Notes: generated by a model from the letters alone, not told the origin. Counted from the stretch's first letter, positions 52,457-63,761 are shown. The stretch is 64,000 nucleotides of DNA from Salpingoeca rosetta (GCA_033442325.1 JAWQFM010000029.1:1-64000); one strand, 5' to 3'. Numbers and translations are program-made.

Positions 52457-55400
52457 ATGAGCAGCGCACCACAATCGCTGGTGTCGCTTTCGCACACGTC
52501 TTCTTCATCACGTCCTCGGCTTCGCTTCCTCTTGATCTTACTCTTCTCCGCTCTGCTTGGCTTTGCAACATTCACGCATGGCGCAGCTGGTATGAATGTG
52601 TGTTGTGTCTGTGTGTCTGTGTCTGTGTCTGTGTGTGTCTGTGTCTGTGTGTGCCTGTGTGTGGGGGGGGGCTTATATGTTTGTTTGTTTGTTTGTTTTG
52701 TGTGCGGCTGATTGTCGCAATGTCGTTTCGTGTGTTGTTCATGTTGGAGTGAACCCGCGGTGCATGATAGAAGAACTTCGTGGTTTATTTGTGGGCGCGT
52801 CACCGCACTCACACATGCTCACACGCTCTCACGCACGCTCACACGCTCACGCACACATACGATGTAACGCAATGCGTGCCTCTTCTATCGCGTTGCCGGT
52901 TTGATCGCCTGCACACATACACAGAGACCACAACAGGCTCAACCATTCAGCCAATCATCACCTTCCCACAGACGACGACACAACAGGAATGCATCCCCGC
53001 CCCTCAATACCTGATTGGTACGGCACAACAGACCTTCCGAACTGTTGTTGTTTTGGTTCGCCTTGATGGTGGCAAGCCTCGCCACATACACGCACGCTCA
53101 CACATCTACACTCACACACATCTACACTCATCCACACTCACACGCGCGCACTTTCTCCCTCCCTCGCTGTGTGATCTGGCACGCACAAAACGCCTTGAAG
53201 ATGTGGCCACCTGCAAGCAAATGTGCTCTGGATCCTACCAGAACGACGAAAGGACAATCTGCTGGGCCGGCTGTGATTGGTACAACGACGGCGGTGACGA
53301 GTACTGCAAATGTGCGTGCTCCCAAGGCGTTCCCCGCTCGGACCTGCAAAACCCCTGCGTCACAGGGTGTGGGTTTGCCGATGACACGAGCAAGGTGCTC
53401 CTCTGCCCAGCTAACGAGTTTGCACAAGTCGAAAACGACGGCTCCCAGTCGTGCACGCCCGTCACAGCTTGCAGCACAGCGACCGAGTACCAAGTCGTTG
53501 CTCCAACTGCGTCGTCAGACAGACAGTGCGCCGTCTTGTCCACGTGCAGCCCGAGCCAGTACGAAGTCACGGCCGCCACGGCCACTTCCGACCGTGAATG
53601 TCAAGATGTGAGCGTCTGCGACCGCCGAACCGAGTTTGAACAACAACCACCAACAACAACTTCGGACAGAGAGTGCGCAACCATCACCATCTGCGAAGCA
53701 GCTACGCAATATGAGACCAAGGCACCAACGTCAACCAGCGATCGCGAGTGTGCGCCGGTGACGATCTGCACGCGTGGAACGGAGTTTGAAGTAACACCGC
53801 CAACTGCAACGACGGATCGAGTGTGCCAGCTGATCACGCAGTGTGACCCCCAAAGCGAATACCAGACGGTCAGCCCCACGTTCAACTCGGACCGGGAGTG
53901 CGCAGCCCTTACGACCTGTTCTGTCGACACGGAATACGAGTCAACCCCTCCAACCGCAACGACAGACCGCACGTGCTCAAACCTGACCGTGTGCGGCGCA
54001 TCCCAGTTTGAGGCGCAGGCGGCAACAGCGACATCAGACAGGACCTGCCAAGACATCACCATCTGCCTCCGTGCAACCCAATACGAACAAGCCCCACCCA
54101 CGACCACCTCCGACCGTGAATGCCAAGATGTGAGCGTCTGCGACCGCCGAACTGAGTTTGAGCAACACGCACCAACAGCAACTTCGGACAGAGAGTGTGC
54201 AACCATCACCACCTGCAACGCAAGAACGGAATATGAGACCAAGGCACCAACGTCGACCACAGACCGTGAATGCACTACGCTGACCCCGTGTGTGCGGGGC
54301 GAAGAGTACCAGAGCGTTGGGCCAACTGCAACAAGCGACCGTGAATGCACCCCAATCACGCACTGCCATGTGCTGGGCAAGTACCAGACCATTCCAGCCA
54401 CATTCAGCACGGATGCAGTGTGCGCGAACCTCTCACGATGCGATGCAACAACCCAGTACGAGCTGGGAGCACCAACAGCAACGTCTGATCGAGTTTGTGA
54501 TGACCTCGCTTCTTGTAACATTGATCAGTACGAGACGGCAGCACCAACAGCCACGTCTGACCGCACCTGTGCCAACGTCACAGTGTGTGATGCAGCAACA
54601 GAGTACGAGACGGCAGCACCAACAGCAACGTCTGACCGCACCTGTGCAAACGTCAACACTTGCAGCATCGAGCAATACGAGACGGCAGCACCAACAGCAA
54701 CGTCTGACCGCACCTGTGCCAACGTCACAGCGTGTGATGCAGCAACACAGTACGAGACGGCAGCACCAACAGCAACGTCTGACCGCACCTGTGCCAACGT
54801 CACAGCGTGTGATGCAGCAGCAGAGTACGAGACGGCAGCACCAACAGCAACGTCTGACCGCACCTGTGCCAACGTCACAGTGTGTGATGCAGCAACACAG
54901 TACGAGACGGCAGCACCAACAGCAACGTCTGACCGCACCTGTGCCAACGTCACAGCGTGTGATGCAGCAGCAGAGTACGAGACGGTAGCACCAACAGCAA
55001 CGTCTGACAGAGCGTGCGCCAACGTCACAGCGTGTGATACAGCTACAGAGTACGAGACGGTAGCACCAACAGCAACGTCTGACCGCACCTGCGCAAACGT
55101 CACAGCGTGTGATGCAGCTACAGAGTACGAGACGGTAGCACCAACAGCAACGTCTGATCGCACCTGTGCCAACGTCACAGCGTGTGATGCAGCTACAGAG
55201 TACGAGACGGCAGCACCAACAGCAACGTCTGACCGCACGTGCGCCAACGTCACAGCGTGTGATACAGCAACACAGTACGAGATAGCAGCACCAACAGCCA
55301 CGTCTGATCGCACCTGTTCCAACGTCAACACTTGCAGCATCGAGCAATACGAGACGGCAGCACCAACAGCAACGTCTGACAGAGAGTGCGCCAATCTCAC

Positions 55401-58400
55401 TGTGTGCGATCCAGCCACGCAGTTCCAAGCGACTGCACCAACCTCCGTCTCCGATCGACAATGCGCAAATATCACTGCATGTGGCGCTGCAACACAGTAC
55501 GAGACTGCAGCAGCTACGCCAACATCCGATCGCACCTGTGCACGCTTGCTCCTGTGCGGCCCATCACAGTACGAGGTGCGTGCGCCAACACCAACGACAG
55601 ACCGCGTGTGCCAAACCGCCAACTTCACGTCCGTCGTCCACGCCACCGTAACTACGCAAACAGTAGCCTCAGGGCTGGCGCCTGCTGCCGCCCGCGTGCC
55701 TTTCTCTCAACCCGCCCTGCTCCCTGTCAGCGTTGCCGGCACAGGGCGCGCAGAGGTGGCTCTGCCCAACACAGACGTGGCCGCGTCGGCGACATACAGC
55801 CTTGCCGCCGTCGCTGCACTCAACATCACAGACGCCATCACAGCAACAGCAGACGTGTACCACGACAGCAGCAGCGTTGTAATTCACGCGCGTGTTGCAG
55901 ACGCCCTGGGTGACACCACCAACATCCTCCCCGGTACGCTCACCGCCGAGGTGGTGGCGGATGCACAGCTGACGACTGCCCTGACCACCGTTGGCAGCAC
56001 AGCACCCCACACCCTCACCTGCACCTGCGCCGTGCGGTCACAGACACACGGGCTGTGCCAGGCAACATGCAGCGTGCCTCAGGACTGGTTCACAGCACTG
56101 GCAGTCGGCACCACTGCGTCTGCCTCCATCGCTGTCCAGGCAAGCAGCACGGGCAGCGCAAGGGCATCCCCACGCCGCACCATCGCCGCTGTCACCGTGC
56201 ACGGCAGCAGCGCCGCTGTGACCCCGCCCACCAACGCCATTTTCCTGCGCCTGCCCGAGGCGCCTGTTGCGCCCGGCGACGCTGCGACTGTGCAGGTGGG
56301 CGCCCGCCTCTCCGCCTTCCCGCTCGGCGGCTTTGTGGTGAAGCTCGAGTGTGCAGACGCGGCCGGCAAGGCCACGTTTGGCGCCGTTGCCATTGACGAC
56401 ACCACCTGGAGCAGCTTCGCGGCCGGGGAGGGAACGTCGGCTGTCAGCATCGGCGCTGTGCTCGCTGAGGGAGCGGCGCAGGTGAGTGGCCAGGACGATG
56501 CAGCGGTCCTGTTCACAGTGGCACTGAACCTGGACGATGACGCCGCAACCACAGTCCAGACACTCCTCAACATCAACCTAACGGTGAGTGAGGTGCTCGA
56601 CAACGCCAACAACATCCGCACCACCGCCACCCGCACGTATGCTGTGGACTTTACGGGTCTCGCCTCCTCCGTGCTCTCCTCTGCAGGCCCGGTCACCGGC
56701 GCTGTCCGCATCCGCCCTGTGCGTGCTGTCGGCGCTGTGTCGTTTGTAAGCACCACGCCCCGCATCCTCAACACAGCACCGCTCACGGGCGTCAGCGACG
56801 CCGCCGCATTCAGCATCGACACGCGCCTCGTATTGTCGGACGGCCAGCTGGTGTCTACAGCTACATCTGCACTTGCCGCTACAACAACGGTGCAGCAGTG
56901 TGCTGTTGCGTCTGGGCCGCCGACACTGGTGTCGCTGGAGCAGGACTGCAGCGGTGGCGTGGTCTCCACGCTGGACACGAGTGGCGGCACGGCTGTTCTG
57001 GAGATCAGTACCACCACCACGCTGGGCAGGGCTGCTGCTGCAGTGCTCACGCGCCGTGTGCTGGTGGAGGTGTGGAGCCCACGACTGCCGTTGATGGTGG
57101 CCACCGCGCCAAGCGTGCTTCGGCCCATTGCTGGGTGGCGTGAGCCTGCGGCCAACAGCGCCAACTCCTCCACATGTGATGCCCCGCGCTGGCAAACCCC
57201 GCATGTGCAGGTGACGGCGACATTTGCGTCCGGCGACCAAGAAGTGTCCGCTGTGGATGTCACCGGGCTTGTCGCTGCCGGCATCACCGCCAACGACACG
57301 ACCGTGCTTGCCGCCGCTAATGAGGATGAAGTCGGTGTGGCAGCGCTGCGGCCTCTTCGGGCACTGCGGAGCGGCGCTGTGCGTGTTATGGTCGTGCGTG
57401 CTGGGGACGGCATTGGCTCAGGCACCGTACTGGGCGAGGCAGCTCAGGCGACTGTAGTCGTGGATCCGGCAACGACGCCTGATGCGTACATCGGATGGCA
57501 GGGCATTGATGCCGTGGCCGTGAGCAATGTGGACCTAAGGCCCGTAAGTGGTAGTGACCCAGCCGGGGCAGGCTGGCTCGACGCAGTTGTGTTTGAGGTG
57601 GCGGTGGCCACGCACGCGCTGCGGGCAGAGGGTGCGTCCACTGCGCTCCTTGCGAGTCTCGTGCTGGAGGATGGGTGGCGGGAGCCGCTGGTGCCGGCCC
57701 GCGACGTCCTCTTCACCAGCATGGCTGCAGACCAGATCACCATTGACGCGGGCAACAGAGCCACTGTTGCTGTCGGCGCGACGAGCGGGTCGCGGGAGCT
57801 GGTGGCGGCCCAGCTCACGTCCACGGCAGTCGACGCTGCAACGGGCAACAACGCCGCCTGCGTGCCTCGCGTGCGCGCAAACGTGACGCTCGACCTCGAC
57901 CTGCCGGCCCCGACAGGCGTGCGGGTGAGCGGTGTTGTTTCTCGCATCACGCCCGCAGGTGACGCCGCTGCGCTGGCCGGCATTGCAACTGGCTTCAGCA
58001 TTGGTGTGGCGGTTGCTTTTGAGGACGGCACGGAGCGGGATATGACGACAGATGGGCGTGTGACAGCAACGGTGGCCCCGTCTGCTGCTGGTGCTACTGT
58101 AGAGCGGGGAGCCAACGGCGCGCTTCGCGTGGAGGCCATTGCCGCAGCACCAAACTCGCCGTCCATATCGCTGGTGACAGTGGCTTTTGATGGCGGTAAC
58201 GGACCCGCGTCCGTCGTCAACACCACGTTCCAGGTGCTGACAGTCAAATACACGGCCCTCCGCACAACGGCACGCCCCTTTCCAGCGTACGCGGGATCGC
58301 AGAGCGTCAGCGTGACTGAGCTTGCTCCCATCAACGGCACGGCTCCGCTTCAGTACCAGCGCGCACAGCTGGCGACAGCCATGATGCTGGACGATGGCAG

Positions 58401-61400
58401 TGAGCTTGCGCTTGATGCCGGTGACGTGGTGTATGCGGTGCGCCGTGCAGATGACGATGACAGTGCAGCACAACTGCTGCAGGGCGCAGTGGTGGAGCCA
58501 TCAACGCCAGGAAACATCACCGTGCTCGCAACGGCATTTGGATCATTTGAAGAGAGCCCTCGCTTTGGCCTGAGCGTGGTCGACGATGCAGTGCACGTGG
58601 TTGCGCTCCGCTCCCTCAGCACCACCTCTGGTATCGCGTTGACTTCACAGCAGGGGCAGACTGCAGGCTTTGCTGTCTGTGCGGCGGAGCTTAGCGATGG
58701 CACGCAGCTGCCACAGCTGTACTCCAACGGCCGTGCCCAGTATCCGAGTCTCATTCAACTGTCGGTGTCTGACGCAGATGTGCTGCGCATCAACAGCACC
58801 ACGGGGGAAGTTGTGCTGCTTGCCAACAGCCCAGGCGTGCTGCAGATTGTCGCACAGGTCACGTCGGCGCCCTCTGTTGTGACCACGACCGACGTGTCGT
58901 GCAACCTCCAGCCTGCGCTCGGCGACGTGGACGTCGGCCAGATGTCTGGTGTACCGGTCCCTGGCCCGCTGTCCATCGGCGACGAGCTGCAGGTGCAAGT
59001 GCGCGTCAACACAGGGAGCACGGACATTGGCTCGTTTACCATGGAGCTGCAGTATGATGCTTCTATTGTGTCGTTTGTTGGCGCTGATGCGACGTTTGGG
59101 GGAAGCCTGGAGGCCACGGACGATGGCCAGGGCTCGTTGCGTCTCGGTGGTGTTGTGTCTTCGAGCGGCGTTGGCGGGAGCGCTGCTGCCATTGCTCACG
59201 TTACGTTCCAGGCCGTCAGCGCTGGCGCGTTTGTGGTTGAGGGCGCGGTGACGGACTTGTTGGACCGCCAGCTTCCATCGCAACCGATTGTGGCGGGCCT
59301 GCCGTCTGCGGTTGTTGCTGGACGCGTGTGGATTTCGGTCACCGGTGCCGACGGTGGAGAGCAGCAGAGACGAAGGCGTTCGGGGGTGCGGCTGCCGGTA
59401 CCACCACCCCAGTCCCTGGCGCAGCCACGGCGGCGGCGCAACGCAGACAGCGACCCGTTTGCAAGTGCAGCGGACGTGGACGGCGATGGGCGGTTCACAA
59501 TTGGAGACGCGTTCTTCACGCTGCGGTATGTGGTGCTGGAGACGCAAGAGTTTGCCGGGGCGGACGGAGCGGCGGTGCAGGCCATTCTGGCCGAGGACCC
59601 CCGGCGACGCAGCGCACTCGACGCAGACCGGGACGGCACTGTGCGTCTGCGCGACAGCAGGCTGCAGAGCCAAGTAGCCACTGGCAAAGCGGTGTTCCTC
59701 GGCAGCATCCCAGGCGTGGACGTTGCCGTAAACCAAGACACGTCAGCATGTGGCGTTTCCGTGAGCGCAACTGTGTTTGAGCCTGGCCTTGGCGGAGCTG
59801 CTGCCTCCTCGACACGGGTGTTTGTGTTGGTTGATGGGCTTGCGCAAGACGGGGGCACAACCGCCACCCTGCTATCGCTGCCTGGCACTGGCACTGGCAT
59901 TGATGTGGCACAGCTGTCACCGGCTCTGTCCGACGCTGTCGCTGTGTACGGCAGCGAGCCTGGGGCGCAGGCTGTGCTGCTCGAGGCTGTGCCATCAAAT
60001 GCAAGTGCACCCGTGAGCGCTGTGTACACGGCTCTCTTGCCACCTGCTGTGGATACGCAGCTCATTGGCGTGTCGGTGTTTGCGGTTGTGTCACGTGGTG
60101 TGCGGACGTACGCAACGTTCTTCGGCAACCAGGCAACGACGGGTGCGCCTGTCGTGCCCTCAAGGCGCACCGAGACTGTGCGCGCATTTGCCAACGCAGA
60201 CGTGGACGCCGCAGTCCTAGATACGGGGCTTGATTCTGGCTACAACCCCCTCACCACCGCAGCCCTCAACAACACGCGCGCGCAGCAGTATTGTATCCGA
60301 CAATGCGTGGCCACGGGCGACGATGTCGTGTCTGCCTACTTTTACAACACGACCGCGTTCACGTGTGTTTCCACCAGCACATGCGACACGCTGAGTGAGT
60401 ACGAAAGTGAGCCAGCAACGAGCACAAGCAACAGAGAATGTGAGCCGCTGAGAGCTTGTGACGCAGCAACAGAGTACGAGACGGCAGCACCAACAGCAAC
60501 GTCTGATCGCACCTGTGCCAACGTCACAGCGTGTGATGCAGCTACAGAGTACGAGACGGCAGCACCAACAGCAACGTCTGATCGCACCTGTGCCAACGTC
60601 ACAGCTTGTGACGCAGCAACAGAGTACGAGACGGCAGCACCAACAGCAACGTCTGATCGCACCTGTGCCAACGTCACAGCGTGTGATGCAGCTACAGAGT
60701 ACGAGACGGAAGCACCAACAGCAACGTCTGACCGCACCTGTGCCAACGTCACAGCGTGTGACGCAGCAACAGAGTACGAGACGGCAGCACCAACAGCAAC
60801 GTCTGATCGCACCTGTGCCAACGTCACAGCGTGTGATGCAGCTACAGAGTACGAGACGGAAGCACCAACAGCAACGTCTGACCGCACCTGTTCCAACGTC
60901 AACACTTGCAGCATCGAGCAATACGAGACGGCAGCACCAACAGCAACGTCTGACCGCACCTGTGCCAACGTCACGTCTTGTGCAGGTGACCAGTACGAGA
61001 TAGCAGCACCAACAGCAACGTCTGACCGCACGTGCGCCAACGTCACAGCGTGTGATGCAGCAACAGAGTACGAGACGGCAGCACCAACAGCAACGTCTGA
61101 CCGCACGTGCGCCAACGTCACAGCGTGTGATACAGCAACACAGTACGAGATAGCAGCACCAACAGCCACGTCTGATCGCACCTGTTCCAACGTCAACACT
61201 TGCAGCATCGAGCAATACGAGACGGCAGCACCAACAGCCACGTCTGACAGAGAGTGCGCCAATCTCACTGTGTGCGATCCAGTCACGCAGTTCCAAGCAA
61301 CTGCACCAACAGCCACATCCGACAGGCTTTGCGCGAACTTGACTTCTAGTTCAACTCAGAGTCCAACAGCAGCTGCTGCTATTGCTTCTGTTCAAATTCC

Positions 61401-62922
61401 GGAAGCATCAAACCTTGGGCTAGCTGTGTCTGTGCTTGGCGCCCTTGTGTGTTGTTTTGGTTTGGTTCGGACGGTTCGTACACCAGTGTGGCCACTGTTT
61501 CTTTCACTCGCTCTGTGCCACGTGTACTTCGGCGTTGAGTCCGTTGCACTGTCCGACGACATTTCGTTTTCTCTTGTTGCGGACCGGTGCCTCGCCCTCG
61601 GCGCTTTCAAGCTTGCGCTTTCATTGAGTTGTCTCTGGTAAGATTGCTGATGGGATGATGTGTCCAGTTCACCTTGTGCCTGCATTTGATTCGCTATGTG
61701 TTACTCACTTTCTCCACTTGCTTCTTTCGCTAGCTGGCTTGGTGCATGCGTCCTTCAGTCGTCCACCGACATCAATCCTTTCACGTTGCGTCCTCTCGGG
61801 CTCTTTGCCATCGTCTGCGGTCAGTGCGCTCCTAGTGCAGCTTTGAGTGTTTGTTCCAAGCAGTGTAGAGCCTAGGTCCACGCGCCTGCTGTACTCACCA
61901 ACATTACTTTGCTATCCGCCTACAGCCATTCCAATCACAACTGCTGTTGCCCTCGTCGCTGCCGCGCCGTCCTCATTTGGAGCGTCGACCGGCTGGTAAG
62001 TGTATTGGAGGTGTTGCACCACATGAAACGATCAACTGCGCGTGGGTGTGGGCCGTCGCTGTGCCAACTTTACTCACACCAGGTACGCCTTGCTCGCTTC
62101 GCTTTTGACAGGTGTGACCTCCATCAACCGCTAGCACGAGGCCTCGCTGGTATTCTGGCGTCCTGTACTCTGGGCTTTTCCCCGCTGATTTACGCGAGCA
62201 TACGACGCATCCGTCACCGCCGCCAGTTCTTCATGGGCGACATTGTTGATGATTTGTTTGGGAACGAGTCTCGCATCCAGCGGCCGTTGCTGGCTGCTGC
62301 CATCCTCCTCGTTGTCGCCAACCGCGTCTCACTCAACCTTCCAGTGCATCTGAGTGTGGATGACGATATTCCAGAGCACATGCCAGTGGTGAACGTCATG
62401 TGTGCGGTTGCGTTGACGGCGGTGTCCCTGGTCTTCTTGTGCACGCGTCTTGGTCGATCAGATAACAACGGCAGCAACAAGGGCGGTCTTGCTGGATATG
62501 CTTCACCCAACAACAGTGGAGACCCATCCAAATTCGTTCATTTGAACACCATGCCTGCAGATGATGTTCCACGCAGCTTTGTCAGCCGCATTAGCAAACG
62601 AGGCGCGTTCTCGCCTTCAACACCCGCTCACCTACCAGGCAGCATCAGCAGGAGCATGCTGACTTCCTTCCGTTATCTTCCACGGTACGAAAATGACAGC
62701 AGTTCTGACGATGTGTCAGGCATGAGTATCTCGGACAAAGTGCACGAGGACGTCAGTGGCATTCACGAGGATACATCTTCCTCTTCGATTCTAAGAGGTT
62801 TGACGTCACTGGACATTAGCGATGGGGGGGAATCGATCGACTTGTTCCCAGTTGCAATCGATCGACAGGAGGTTGAGAACGCCGATGTGGAAAGTATTGA
62901 GGACAATGTTGTTGTGGTTTGA
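52457..62922 (+). CDS. Giant (~3209 aa) adhesion-GPCR-like receptor: signal peptide, Cys-rich repeats, TMEM132-like region, cohesin-like, RRRR x2, dockerin-like, Cys-rich repeats, 7TM, cytoplasmic tail (exons 52457-52589, 52925-53017, 53201-61637, 61734-61819, 61926-61995, 62112-62922)
   Basis: Six exons join in frame at GT-AG sites (9630 nt). Signal peptide RLRFLLILLFSALLGFATFTHG. Seven hydrophobic segments appear after splicing, with Cys at the top of TM3 (DRC) and in ECL2 (GWC). Domain motifs are detailed in findings. Confidence 0.85.
53452..55617 (+). repeat. ~75-bp coding tandem array 1 (~29 units, C..V..C....EYE.APTATSDR.C)
   Basis: Recurrent gagtacgagacggcagcaccaacagcaacgtctgaccgcacctgtgccaacgtcacag; near-identical units at 54530-55390. 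Confidence 0.95.
60361..61340 (+). repeat. ~75-bp coding tandem array 2 (~13 units, same consensus as array 1)
   Basis: Same unit sequence, immediately upstream of TM1. Confidence 0.95.
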
Positions 62923-63761
62923 ATGCTTTGCGGTGACGTTTTTGAAGATCACGAGTGTGTACTGGTGTGCTTTCTGAATTGTAACGTGCGCTGTGTTACC
63001 TTCTAATAAATATGACCTTGTTTTCAGTTGACTGACACGCATGACAGACATGCTACAACGAAATTTCTTCCAAATTCATAAAACCAAAGCAAGCAAAACC
63101 AATGCAGAACCGCTTGAATGTTGAATGTTACGAGGACAGCCAGTGTTCCTGCATTGACTCACTGTGTGTGATGGCACTCAATGATTTCTAAGATCCAGCA
63201 TGTTGTAGACAGGGTAGAGTGCATCACATGGAATTCACTGCCATTCTGCTAAAACACGGTGTGTGTGTGTGTGTTTTACTGTAGGCAAACGCAACAAACA
63301 AGAACACAAGGAGAATGAACAAGCACAACAAGCTGCCGCCAAATCAACTCGGGCAGCATGCTCAAACAAACACAAGACTAGTGCACACACAGTCAATGGC
63401 GCTGCCAAGGCGACATGGGCAGCGTGTGCACGAACACAAACAATCTAAACAATGAGCAGCATGCATACATGCGCGCAGAGCAATGCTAGGCATGGCATGA
63501 ATGCTTGCAGGCAAGCATACACAACAGACAACACTTCACAACACTGCATGGTACGCACACATAGCATTTGCCAAACATGGCGAGCATGCACACACACACA
63601 CATGGCACACAACTCACGTGTGTAGGGGAAGGAGGAGAGGAGAGGCAGTTGGCACACATGCATGCCAGCAGAGTGGAAGGAATGTTTGCCAACGGAAAAA
63701 CCACAAAGCAGGTGTTGTTGGCAAACAAGACAAAACCACATGAGAAGGCAAATTAGGAAGG

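What the first reader, a model, noticed from the sequence alone, without database searches (positions are those of the whole stretch)
55850..58920. TMEM132-like ectodomain embedded in a 7TM receptor
Seen, in order: CSVPQDWF, IFLRLPEAPVAPGD, RILNTAPLTG, VEVWSPRLPL....SVLRPIAGWR, C...RWQTPHVQVTATF, DVTGLV and LRAEG..LLASLVLEDG..PL. These resemble conserved blocks of animal TMEM132 proteins as I recall them (ILNTAILTG, VWVPRLPL..L.QIKGWR, C.LQYQ...V.V.TQF, DVT.LV). Known: animal TMEM132s are single-pass proteins with cohesin-like and bacterial-Ig-like domains. Inference: this ancient adhesion module is here wired to a GPCR-like output in a unicellular holozoan, and may supply a second cohesin-like domain (~56240-56620) able to bind the dockerin.
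Basis: partly seen in the sequence, partly recalled or inferred. Interest (0 to 1): 0.7.

Follow-up and report, generated by a model that had tools for sequence, protein, structure and literature searches.

The report
TMEM132-type module in choanoflagellate receptor
A giant, expressed surface protein of the choanoflagellate Salpingoeca rosetta (PTSG_09083) really does contain the extracellular adhesion module of animal TMEM132 proteins, here anchored by seven membrane helices instead of one; the module was already known from choanoflagellate cadherins, so only this wiring is new.

Summary
They fall on the most conserved columns of a large protein family.

The stretch 55597-58929 lies in the 8.4-kb exon of S. 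rosetta PTSG_09083. It encodes an Ig-like domain, a cohesin-fold domain and three Big_2-like domains carrying the four signature cysteines. This is the TMEM132 ectodomain plan, extended by three more Big_2-like domains.

- **Direct Pfam hits** are ordered but below the curated cut-offs.
- **Paralogues and 98 relatives** that align end to end do pass them.
- **A leave-one-out profile** scores this sequence at 205 bits.
- **The predicted structure** (pLDDT 88) superposes best on chordate TMEM132C/D/E models and on solved cohesins (Z 14).

The module is the front half of a conserved unit of about 1,400 residues, almost always followed by a canonical cohesin and dockerin.

The protein is not a TMEM132 orthologue: it lacks the N- and C-terminal TMEM132 domains and the single-pass anchor. 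Seven helices are predicted, but no GPCR profile matches them. Relatives, one of them from Codosiga hollandica, join the same module to a true Secretin-family 7TM.

Binding of the dockerin by the first cohesin-fold domain is untested and looks unlikely. Sanchez-Pulido and Ponting (2017) had already described this module in choanoflagellate cadherins.

The parts
53230..55596 (+). First stalk of TNFR-like cysteine-rich repeats (start approximate; the signal-peptide exon lies upstream)
   Evidence: Pfam TNFR_c6 E 1.6e-10. About 8 cysteines per 100 residues over ORF residues 100-900. The public model's N-terminus is shown.
55597..56208 (+).
   Evidence: Aligns with paralogues from query residue 16-28 onward. 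Paralogues' weak Ig_TMEM132_2nd hits (E 7.7e-4 and 0.013, below cut-off) map here. This sequence has no hit of its own.
56227..56721 (+). Cohesin-fold domain, equivalent to the TMEM132 3rd (cohesin-like) domain
   Evidence: AF2 model residues 7-171 match more than 40 solved cohesins; best Z 14.0, rmsd 2.3-2.4, 135 residues aligned. Paralogues' PF23039 hits (27.5 bits, cut-off 27) map to 56233-56598.
56731..57087 (+). TMEM132 4th domain (first Big_2-like Ig) with the intradomain cysteine pair at 56899 and 56947
   Evidence: Own Pfam hit PF16070 E 0.016. 93 of 99 aligned relatives hit it at E<=1e-3, best 1e-24. C231 and C247 are nearly invariant.
57094..57492 (+). TMEM132 5th domain (second Big_2-like Ig); conserved cysteine at 57175
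   Evidence: Own Pfam hit PF23486 E 5e-5 to 4e-4; 26.1 bits in the genome search. 63 of 99 relatives hit it.
57493..57846 (+). TMEM132 6th domain (third Big_2-like Ig); its partner cysteine for the interdomain pair is just behind it at 57859
   Evidence: Mapped from paralogues' PF23487 hits (E 1e-10 to 7e-5). 23 of 99 relatives hit it. Shape match to chordate TMEM132C/D/E models covers model residues 114-556.
57853..58929 (+). Three further Big_2-like domains (about 57853-58200, 58201-58581, 58582-58929), conserved in every copy of the module; no Pfam family matches them
   Evidence: Profile-profile comparison links them to the 5th and 6th domains at 85-90% probability, E 1.5e-6 to 6e-6. They are aligned in all paralogues and in the top 150 representatives.
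58978..59229 (+). Canonical cohesin domain that follows the module directly
   Evidence: Pfam Cohesin E 1.7e-4, 22.3 bits, cut-off 24.1. 219 of 220 module copies in relatives are followed by this unit.
59368..59439 (+). Linker with two runs of four arginines (59368 and 59428)
   Evidence: Found by script in the translation. Earlier scan notes read them as protease sites; I did not test this.
59470..59655 (+). Dockerin-like calcium-binding module
   Evidence: Pfam Dockerin_1 E 0.014, two stretches, below cut-off. 197 related cohesin-dockerin hits cover both parts.
60385..61413 (+). Second stalk of TNFR-like cysteine-rich repeats
   Evidence: Translation, cysteine density, weak TNFR_c6 hit.
61411..62442 (+). 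Seven predicted membrane helices spread over four exons (big exon ends 61637; then 61734-61819, 61926-61995, 62112-62922)
   Evidence: Hydropathy scans. Seven long helices in the AF2 secondary structure. The three GT..AG introns are each supported by 29-52 split RNA reads in each of two runs. No Pfam family at E<=5.

Best explanation
Window 55597-58929 is part of the 8.4-kb exon of Salpingoeca rosetta PTSG_09083 (XP_004989885.1, 3209 aa; variant XP_004989884.1, 3035 aa). It encodes a TMEM132-type extracellular module.

The module has an Ig-like domain, a cohesin-fold domain and three Big_2-like Ig domains with the family's four signature cysteines. Three further Big_2-like domains extend it.

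This module is the front half of a conserved unit of about 1,400 residues. The unit ends in a canonical cohesin, a linker with two runs of four arginines, and a dockerin. In this protein the unit sits between two stalks of TNFR-like cysteine-rich repeats and is anchored by seven membrane helices.

**Shown here:** homology, fold, domain order, recurrence of the unit, transcription and splicing.

**Inferred:**
- The module works as a rigid extracellular protein-binding (adhesion) scaffold, as proposed for animal TMEM132 proteins and for the choanoflagellate cadherins that carry the same module.
- Engagement of the ectodomain is passed to the cell through the seven-helix domain.

The protein carries the TMEM132 module. 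It is not the orthologue of the animal TMEM132 gene.
For: **Direct Pfam hits.** Two adjacent, ordered hits to Ig_TMEM132_4th and 5th, below cut-off.

**Paralogues.** Eight S. rosetta paralogous segments align to the region, five of them over nearly the whole region (E 4e-31 to 1e-6). Between them they carry TMEM132 2nd, 3rd, 4th, 5th and 6th domain hits in that order, the best above cut-off: 4th 75 bits, 5th 58 bits, 6th 42 bits, 3rd 27.5 bits. Two weaker matches (L016 and C6:1970676-1973741) were left out of alignment A1.

**Wider family.**
- An exhaustive profile search finds 1917 representative proteins at E<=1e-3, 749 of them at E<=1e-30.
- Of 99 aligned core segments, 93 hit PF16070, 63 PF23486, 23 PF23487 and 8 PF23039.
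- A leave-one-out profile scores this sequence at 204.9 bits, against 6.6 for the best of 2000 shuffles.

**Signature cysteines.** The four nearly invariant cysteines (C231 and C247 in the 4th domain, C323 in the 5th, C551 behind the 6th) fit the pattern reported for TMEM132: one pair inside BIG1 and one pair between BIG2 and BIG3 (PMC6030884).

**Structure.**
- The AF2 model has pLDDT 88.4 and pTM 0.79.
- By shape, its best matches are TMEM132 clusters. A TMEM132_4th cluster gives TM 0.62/0.72. Chordate T132E, T132D and T132C give TM 0.50, 0.53 and 0.45 with 287-339 residues aligned at rmsd 3.6-4.5.
- Generic Big_2 arrays reach only 0.28-0.36, and a cohesin cluster 0.37.
- The first domain has the cohesin fold at Z 14.

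**Language-model features.** The nearest clusters are TMEM132_4th clusters, at 0.94 and 0.91.

**Expression.** RNA-seq covers 57000-62950 continuously on the + strand and confirms the three 3' introns.
Against: - The sequence's own Pfam scores stay below the curated cut-offs. It has no direct hit to the 2nd, 3rd or 6th domain, nor to TMEM132_N or TMEM132_C.
- I could not obtain an animal TMEM132 sequence for a direct alignment. The link to animals therefore rests on Pfam profiles, on relatives and on predicted structures.
- The adhesion role and the signalling through the seven helices are inferences; nothing here tests binding or signalling.
- The seven-helix part has no family assignment.
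Confidence: 0.85

Rival explanations
1. The stretch is a generic array of bacterial-type Ig (Big_2) domains, and its resemblance to TMEM132 motifs is chance.
For: The sequence's own Pfam hits are below cut-off. Foldseek against the PDB lists many unrelated Ig arrays such as NUP210, S-layer proteins and cadherins.
Against: - The two hits are adjacent and in the right order.
- Relatives that align end to end pass the TMEM132 cut-offs.
- The leave-one-out profile gives 205 bits against 6.6 for shuffles.
- TMEM132 clusters beat generic Big_2 arrays by shape, 0.45-0.62 against 0.28-0.36.
- The four signature cysteines are present.
Confidence: 0.03
2. PTSG_09083 is the choanoflagellate orthologue of the animal TMEM132 gene.
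For: It has the same domain order (Ig, cohesin-like, three Big_2-like) and the same cysteine pattern.
Against: - There is no TMEM132_N or TMEM132_C hit.
- It has seven helices instead of one pass.
- It carries three extra Ig domains, a cohesin-dockerin pair and TNFR-like stalks.
- The module occurs at 17 places in this genome, and the strongest TMEM132 scores belong to other, cadherin-bearing genes.
- This copy is among the most divergent.
Confidence: 0.05
3. The TMEM132-type cohesin-fold domain (56227-56721) is a second binding partner of the protein's own dockerin.
For: It has a genuine cohesin fold, Z 14.0 to dockerin-bound cohesins. It lies in the same chain as a dockerin.
Against: - Each unit already has a canonical cohesin directly before its dockerin, in 219 of 220 copies. 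The stoichiometry therefore leaves no free dockerin in cis.
- Animal TMEM132 keeps this domain although no dockerin is detectable in vertebrates (PMC6030884).
- Sequence identity to solved cohesins is only 10-20%.
- No contact prediction was possible with the tools at hand.
Confidence: 0.1
4. The seven-helix region is a multi-pass membrane anchor unrelated to GPCRs, so the module is not wired to a GPCR-like output.
For: - No Pfam 7TM family matches at E<=5, whether exon by exon or on the public model.
- hhalign against true 7tm_2 regions gives only 12% probability.
- The AF2 model is unreliable, pLDDT 41.8.
- No paralogue exists in the genome.
Against: - There are seven helices with the N-terminus outside.
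- Among the listed language-model neighbours that carry a family, all are GPCR-type (Dicty_CAR, 7tm_2, 7tm_1, Git3, Ocular_alb), at 0.93, with recognition 2667.
- The weak hhalign match pairs the helix-3 cysteine and the cysteine of the following extracellular loop.
- Two relatives with the same ectodomain plan end in a true 7tm_2, E 5.8e-19 and 5.9e-7.
Confidence: 0.33

Closest known systems
Animal TMEM132 proteins (TMEM132A-E; Pfam PF23481, PF23039, PF16070, PF23486, PF23487)
   Same: - Extracellular order of Ig-like, cohesin-like and three Big_2-like domains.
- Four conserved cysteines in the same domains.
- Best structural matches by shape.
   Different: - No TMEM132_N or TMEM132_C domain.
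- Seven helices instead of a single pass with a WIRS/PP1 tail.
- Three extra Big_2-like domains plus a canonical cohesin and dockerin behind the module.
- TNFR-like repeat stalks on both sides.
Choanoflagellate and sponge cadherins that carry the TMEM132 architecture (lefftyrins, coherins, hedglings; Nichols 2012 as cited by Sanchez-Pulido and Ponting 2017, PMC6030884)
   Same: The same five-domain module in the same order. In S. rosetta these are this protein's paralogues by direct alignment. The module is followed by the cohesin-dockerin pair.
   Different: No cadherin repeat is detected anywhere in PTSG_09083. It has TNFR-like repeats instead and a seven-helix anchor.
Adhesion GPCRs of holozoans (GAIN/GPS plus 7tm_2; choanoflagellate catalogue in PMC12716839)
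   Same: A very large adhesion-type ectodomain in front of seven helices. Relatives from Codosiga hollandica and a metagenome carry a true 7tm_2 behind the same module.
   Different: No GAIN/GPS or HRM domain and no 7tm_2 match in this protein. The main text of the catalogue paper does not mention cohesin or TNFR domains, or this gene.
Bacterial cellulosome cohesin modules
   Same: The fold of 56227-56721: Z 14.0, rmsd 2.3-2.4 over 135 of about 143 residues.
   Different: Sequence identity is 10-20%. The domain is embedded in an Ig array of a eukaryotic surface protein, and no dockerin partner has been shown for it.

Membership tests
TMEM132 family (animal single-pass proteins) | Three tandem Big_2-like Ig domains (Pfam 4th, 5th, 6th) | tested here: met
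   Own hits are below cut-off: 4th 15.6 bits, 5th 21-26 bits, 6th none. The feature is met through three other lines:
- relatives that align end to end and pass the cut-offs;
- the leave-one-out profile at 205 bits;
- the shape match to chordate TMEM132C/D/E models, TM 0.45-0.53.

By Pfam's curated cut-off alone it is not met.
TMEM132 family (animal single-pass proteins) | Cohesin-like domain directly before the Ig domains (PF23039) | tested here: met
   No Pfam hit of its own. Paralogue hits map to 56233-56598. The AF2 domain has the cohesin fold at Z 14.0.
TMEM132 family (animal single-pass proteins) | Conserved region or Ig-like domain before the cohesin-like domain (PF23481, PF15705) | tested here: inconclusive
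   Only two paralogues give weak PF23481 hits (E 7.7e-4 and 0.013), which map to 56005-56127. There is no PF15705 hit. This part was not folded.
TMEM132 family (animal single-pass proteins) | Four conserved cysteines: one pair inside BIG1, one pair between BIG2 and BIG3 (PMC6030884) | tested here: met
   The cysteines at 56899 and 56947 (4th domain), 57175 (5th) and 57859 (behind the 6th) are nearly invariant in 126 sequences. Their pattern matches the one in the paper. Their closeness in 3D could not be read from the model.
TMEM132 family (animal single-pass proteins) | Single transmembrane pass followed by the conserved TMEM132_C tail (PP1 and WIRS motifs) | tested here: not met
   No PF15706 hit. 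Seven helices are predicted. More than 1,100 further extracellular residues follow the module.
Lefftyrin / coherin / hedgling cadherins | Cadherin repeats in the same chain as the TMEM132-type module | tested here: not met
   No Cadherin hit in the whole protein at E<=1 to 5. The paralogue on contig 24 does have them, E 1.4e-28.
Adhesion GPCR | Secretin/Adhesion-type 7TM domain (7tm_2) | tested here: inconclusive
   - No Pfam match at E<=5.
- hhalign gives 12% probability.
- Language-model neighbours include 7tm_2 and Dicty_CAR clusters at 0.93.
- Seven helices are predicted.
Adhesion GPCR | GAIN domain with GPS cleavage site before the first helix | tested here: not met
   No GAIN, GPS or HRM hit in P0023:1800-3035. 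TNFR-like repeats run up to about 20 residues before helix 1.

The most novel reading that the evidence does not exclude
Choanoflagellates have a class of GAIN-less adhesion receptors. Their ectodomain is the complete TMEM132-type unit (Ig, cohesin-like, six Big_2-like domains, cohesin, cleavable linker, dockerin) joined to a family-B-like 7TM. PTSG_09083 would be a divergent member and Codosiga hollandica P058928 a clear one. Animal TMEM132 would then be a single-pass, dockerin-less remnant of this unit. The unit as a whole is also found in a few bacterial genomes, which implies transfer between bacteria and the ancestors of animals.
Probability: 0.25. Interest if true: 0.7.

Novelty: new variant of a known kind. 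Interest (0 to 1): 0.5.

Why it matters

- **A tractable model.** This is an expressed protein in a genetically tractable close relative of animals. It carries the whole TMEM132 ectodomain and could be used to find what the module binds.
- **A flexible building block.** The module is not tied to cadherins or to a single-pass anchor. It also occurs on seven-helix proteins, and in at least one choanoflagellate on a true Secretin/Adhesion-type receptor.
- **A hint about origins.** The module is almost always followed by a cohesin-dockerin pair. The animal protein may therefore be a shortened form of a larger ancestral unit.
- **An annotation gap.** Pfam's curated cut-offs miss this copy entirely, and its closest homologue has no Pfam hit at all. 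Divergent members of this family are probably under-annotated.

Tried and rejected
**Searches that gave little or nothing**
- Three word-indexed protein searches gave almost nothing, probably because alanine-rich words swamped the 8000 scored candidates. A blank there says nothing. The exhaustive profile search replaced them.
- No animal TMEM132 sequence could be fetched.
- Sequence searches of the PDB with the protein and with the family profile found no solved relative.
- Searches for the gene's name found no paper, and the GPCR catalogue's supplements are not held.

**The seven-helix region**
- Its AF2 model came out at pLDDT 41.8. I did not search with it, because such a model gives meaningless matches.
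- A whole-chain fold to see which cohesin the dockerin docks on was not run. The tool returns no contacts, so the result could not have been read.

Nothing was retried in another form. The motif coordinates come from residue counts and from alignment positions.
- One genome-collection scan failed on the machine's side. It was repeated unchanged and worked.

**Spliced model**
- I built no joined exon sequence. The exons were searched one by one by reference. The only joined form used is the public protein record that a tool returned (P0023).

**Readings rejected:** a chance Ig array, a TMEM132 orthologue, and a cadherin (see the rival explanations and the membership tests).

Full report
**What is there**

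The finding lies inside one open frame, 52780-61641 on the + strand. The frame ends at a GT donor. A public protein model matches the stretch 55597-58929 at 100% identity over 1111 residues. That model is Salpingoeca rosetta XP_004989884.1 (3035 aa). It is a variant of PTSG_09083 (XP_004989885.1, 3209 aa), annotated only as 'hypothetical' or 'TNFR-Cys domain-containing'. The genome has 55 Mb in 68 contigs, and the window is contig 29.

RNA-seq reads from two 2026 runs cover 57000-62950 without a gap. Their first mates lie on the - strand, as expected for an RNA of the + strand. Split reads confirm three GT..AG introns at 61638-61733, 61820-61925 and 61996-62111, with 29-52 reads each in each run. 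No joint lies inside the TMEM132-like part of the laid stretch. The gene is therefore real, expressed and spliced as modelled.

**The observation**

Their coordinates are listed under the observation check. They coincide with the nearly invariant positions of the family alignment A2: P16, N188, W289, P291, C323, Q329 and D488 of window:56209-57876.

Pfam gives two adjacent, ordered hits to TMEM132 domains, both below the curated cut-offs. The 4th domain scores E 0.016. The 5th domain scores E 5e-5 to 4e-4 and 26.1 bits in the six-frame search of the genome.

**Is it truly TMEM132-like?**

Four independent lines say yes.

1. *Paralogues.* The 1111-residue stretch finds 12 other places in the S. 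rosetta genome at E 4e-31 to 3e-6, most of them over nearly its whole length. Eight of these segments were aligned with it as A1. I left out L016 and C6:1970676-1973741, which phmmer did not recover in the local check. Together the eight carry TMEM132 2nd, 3rd, 4th, 5th and 6th domain hits in that order. The best are well over the cut-offs: 75, 58, 42 and 27.5 bits for the 4th, 5th, 6th and 3rd domains. Through A1 these hits map to 56005-56127 (2nd, core only), 56233-56598 (3rd), 56731-57087 (4th), 57094-57492 (5th) and 57493-57846 (6th).

2. *The wider family.* An exhaustive profile search of 1.84 billion representatives finds 1917 proteins at E<=1e-3 and 749 at E<=1e-30. The best 150 nearly all cover most or all of the 1023-position profile. 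Of 99 aligned core segments, 93 hit PF16070, 63 PF23486, 23 PF23487 and 8 PF23039 at E<=1e-3. A profile built from the other 98 scores this sequence at 204.9 bits in one stretch. The best of 2000 shuffles scores 6.6.

3. *Structure.* With the 126-row alignment, AF2 gives pLDDT 88.4 and pTM 0.79 for 56209-57876.
   - By shape, the nearest Atlas clusters are a TMEM132_4th cluster (TM 0.62/0.72, 441 residues aligned) and the chordate clusters named T132E, TMEM132D and TMEM132C. These give TM by query of 0.50, 0.53 and 0.45, with 339, 338 and 287 residues aligned at rmsd 3.6-4.5.
   - Generic Big_2 arrays reach only 0.28-0.36, and a bacterial cohesin cluster 0.37.
   - Model residues 7-171 superpose on more than forty solved cohesins at up to Z 14.0, rmsd 2.3-2.4 over 135 residues.
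   - Foldseek's other PDB matches are Ig arrays such as NUP210 and S-layer proteins. This fits the Big_2 nature of domains 4-6.

4. *Cysteines.* Sanchez-Pulido and Ponting report four conserved cysteines in TMEM132, one pair inside BIG1 and one pair between BIG2 and BIG3 (PMC6030884). The four nearly invariant cysteines here sit in exactly those places: two in the 4th domain, one in the 5th and one just behind the 6th.

Language-model features agree as a lead. The nearest clusters are TMEM132_4th clusters at 0.94 and 0.91, the second from chordates.

**What the module is part of**

- Behind the 6th domain the conserved stretch goes on for about 360 residues (57853-58929) with no Pfam match. 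Profile-profile comparison shows three more domains related to the 5th and 6th domains (85-90% probability, E 1.5e-6 to 6e-6).
- The stretch ends where a canonical cohesin begins (Pfam E 1.7e-4). Two runs of four arginines and a dockerin follow (E 0.014).
- In the best 150 representatives, 219 of 220 module copies that can be judged are followed directly by this cohesin(-dockerin) part. The TMEM132-type module and the cohesin-dockerin pair therefore form one unit of about 1,400 residues. It has two cohesin-fold domains and one dockerin.
- In PTSG_09083 this unit is flanked by two arrays of TNFR-like cysteine-rich repeats.
- Seven hydrophobic helices spread over four exons follow the second array.

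**The seven helices**

*Against a family assignment*
- No Pfam family matches them at E<=5. I tested them exon by exon and on the public protein record.
- The genome holds no paralogue of this part.
- With only two sequences, AF2 gave pLDDT 41.8, so I did not search with that model.
- hhalign against the 7tm_2 regions of two relatives gives only 12% probability. It does pair the helix-3 cysteine with the cysteine of the next extracellular loop.

*For a GPCR-like domain*
- Language-model features put it next to unnamed clusters at 0.94. Clusters carrying Dicty_CAR, 7tm_2, 7tm_1, Git3 and Ocular_alb follow at 0.93.
- The context is more telling. Codosiga hollandica EP00042_P058928 has TMEM132 4th and 5th domains and a 7tm_2 at E 5.8e-19. 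A metagenomic protein has a weak TNFR hit, TMEM132 4th and 5th domains, a cohesin and a 7tm_2 at E 5.9e-7.
- The closest homologue (36% identity in the module) shares helices 1-3 with this protein at E 1.6e-15 before its contig ends.

I put about two in three on a divergent GPCR-type domain.

The cohesin fold is confirmed. However, each unit carries its own canonical cohesin next to the dockerin. Animal TMEM132 proteins keep the cohesin-like domain although no dockerin homologue is detectable in vertebrates. The domain therefore more likely has another partner. The tools return no contacts, so I could not test binding.

**Comparison with what is known**

The 2017 paper already states that the five TMEM132 domains occur, in the same order, in the lefftyrin, coherin and hedgling cadherins of choanoflagellates and sponges. 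It concludes that the architecture predates animals. The paralogues found here are such cadherins. The presence of a TMEM132-type module in S. rosetta is therefore not new.

PTSG_09083 differs in three ways:
- it has no cadherin repeat;
- it has TNFR-like stalks;
- it has a seven-helix anchor.

It fails the TMEM132 membership test on the single pass and the C-terminal tail. It fails the cadherin test. It fails the adhesion-GPCR test on the GAIN domain, and the 7tm_2 test is open.

I found no paper that names the gene. The main text of the 2025 catalogue of choanoflagellate GPCRs mentions neither cohesin nor TNFR domains, and its supplements were not available.

**Verdict**

This is a new variant of a known kind, of moderate interest.

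Earlier notes of this scan on the same gene describe the cohesin-dockerin clasp and the missing GAIN domain. They gave me the organism, which I then checked myself. Their picture fits what I found, but they are not independent evidence.

Noticed in passing
L023:5687-14914, L024, L025, L030 (contig CAZLMW010000008.1): The whole unit also occurs in bacteria. It comprises the TMEM132-type module with a PF16070 hit, a cohesin and a dockerin.
- It sits in a 3075-aa protein on marine metagenome contigs, between NorB/COX1, a prolyl isomerase, an OmpA-like gene and an M3 peptidase.
- The same protein is on a 99.9-kb contig of a GTDB genome of 8.2 Mb that has three PF16070 hits over the cut-off.
- Only 3 of the 151 genomes searched in its phylum (this genome among them) have a hit, so the distribution is patchy.
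- The bacterial linker between cohesin and dockerin shows no arginine run (read).

   Followed up: partly
window 53230-55596 and 60385-61413: The two TNFR-like arrays that flank the unit end in nearly identical repeats. Reads and contigs give 'goes back' joints at 60600-61310, and reads of the first array map partly onto the second. The two RefSeq variants differ by 174 residues. Repeat number is therefore uncertain or variable, and the arrays look recently expanded or homogenised.
   Followed up: partly
G000:C7:530244-530570 and 535182-535508 (L003, L004); protein P0003 = PTSG_03507: A second S. rosetta 'TNFR-Cys' protein (3207 aa) carries two copies of the module about 5 kb apart with identical Pfam scores (42.6 bits). 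This is a recent internal duplication.
   Followed up: no
P0122 (1941 aa, metagenomic, ENA): This is the closest homologue of the module (36% identity), and it shares helices 1-3. It has no Pfam hit at all at E<=0.01. This sub-lineage of the family is invisible to current Pfam models.
   Followed up: partly
window 59700-60380: About 220 residues lie between the dockerin and the second TNFR-like array. They have no Pfam match and I did not study them.
   Followed up: no
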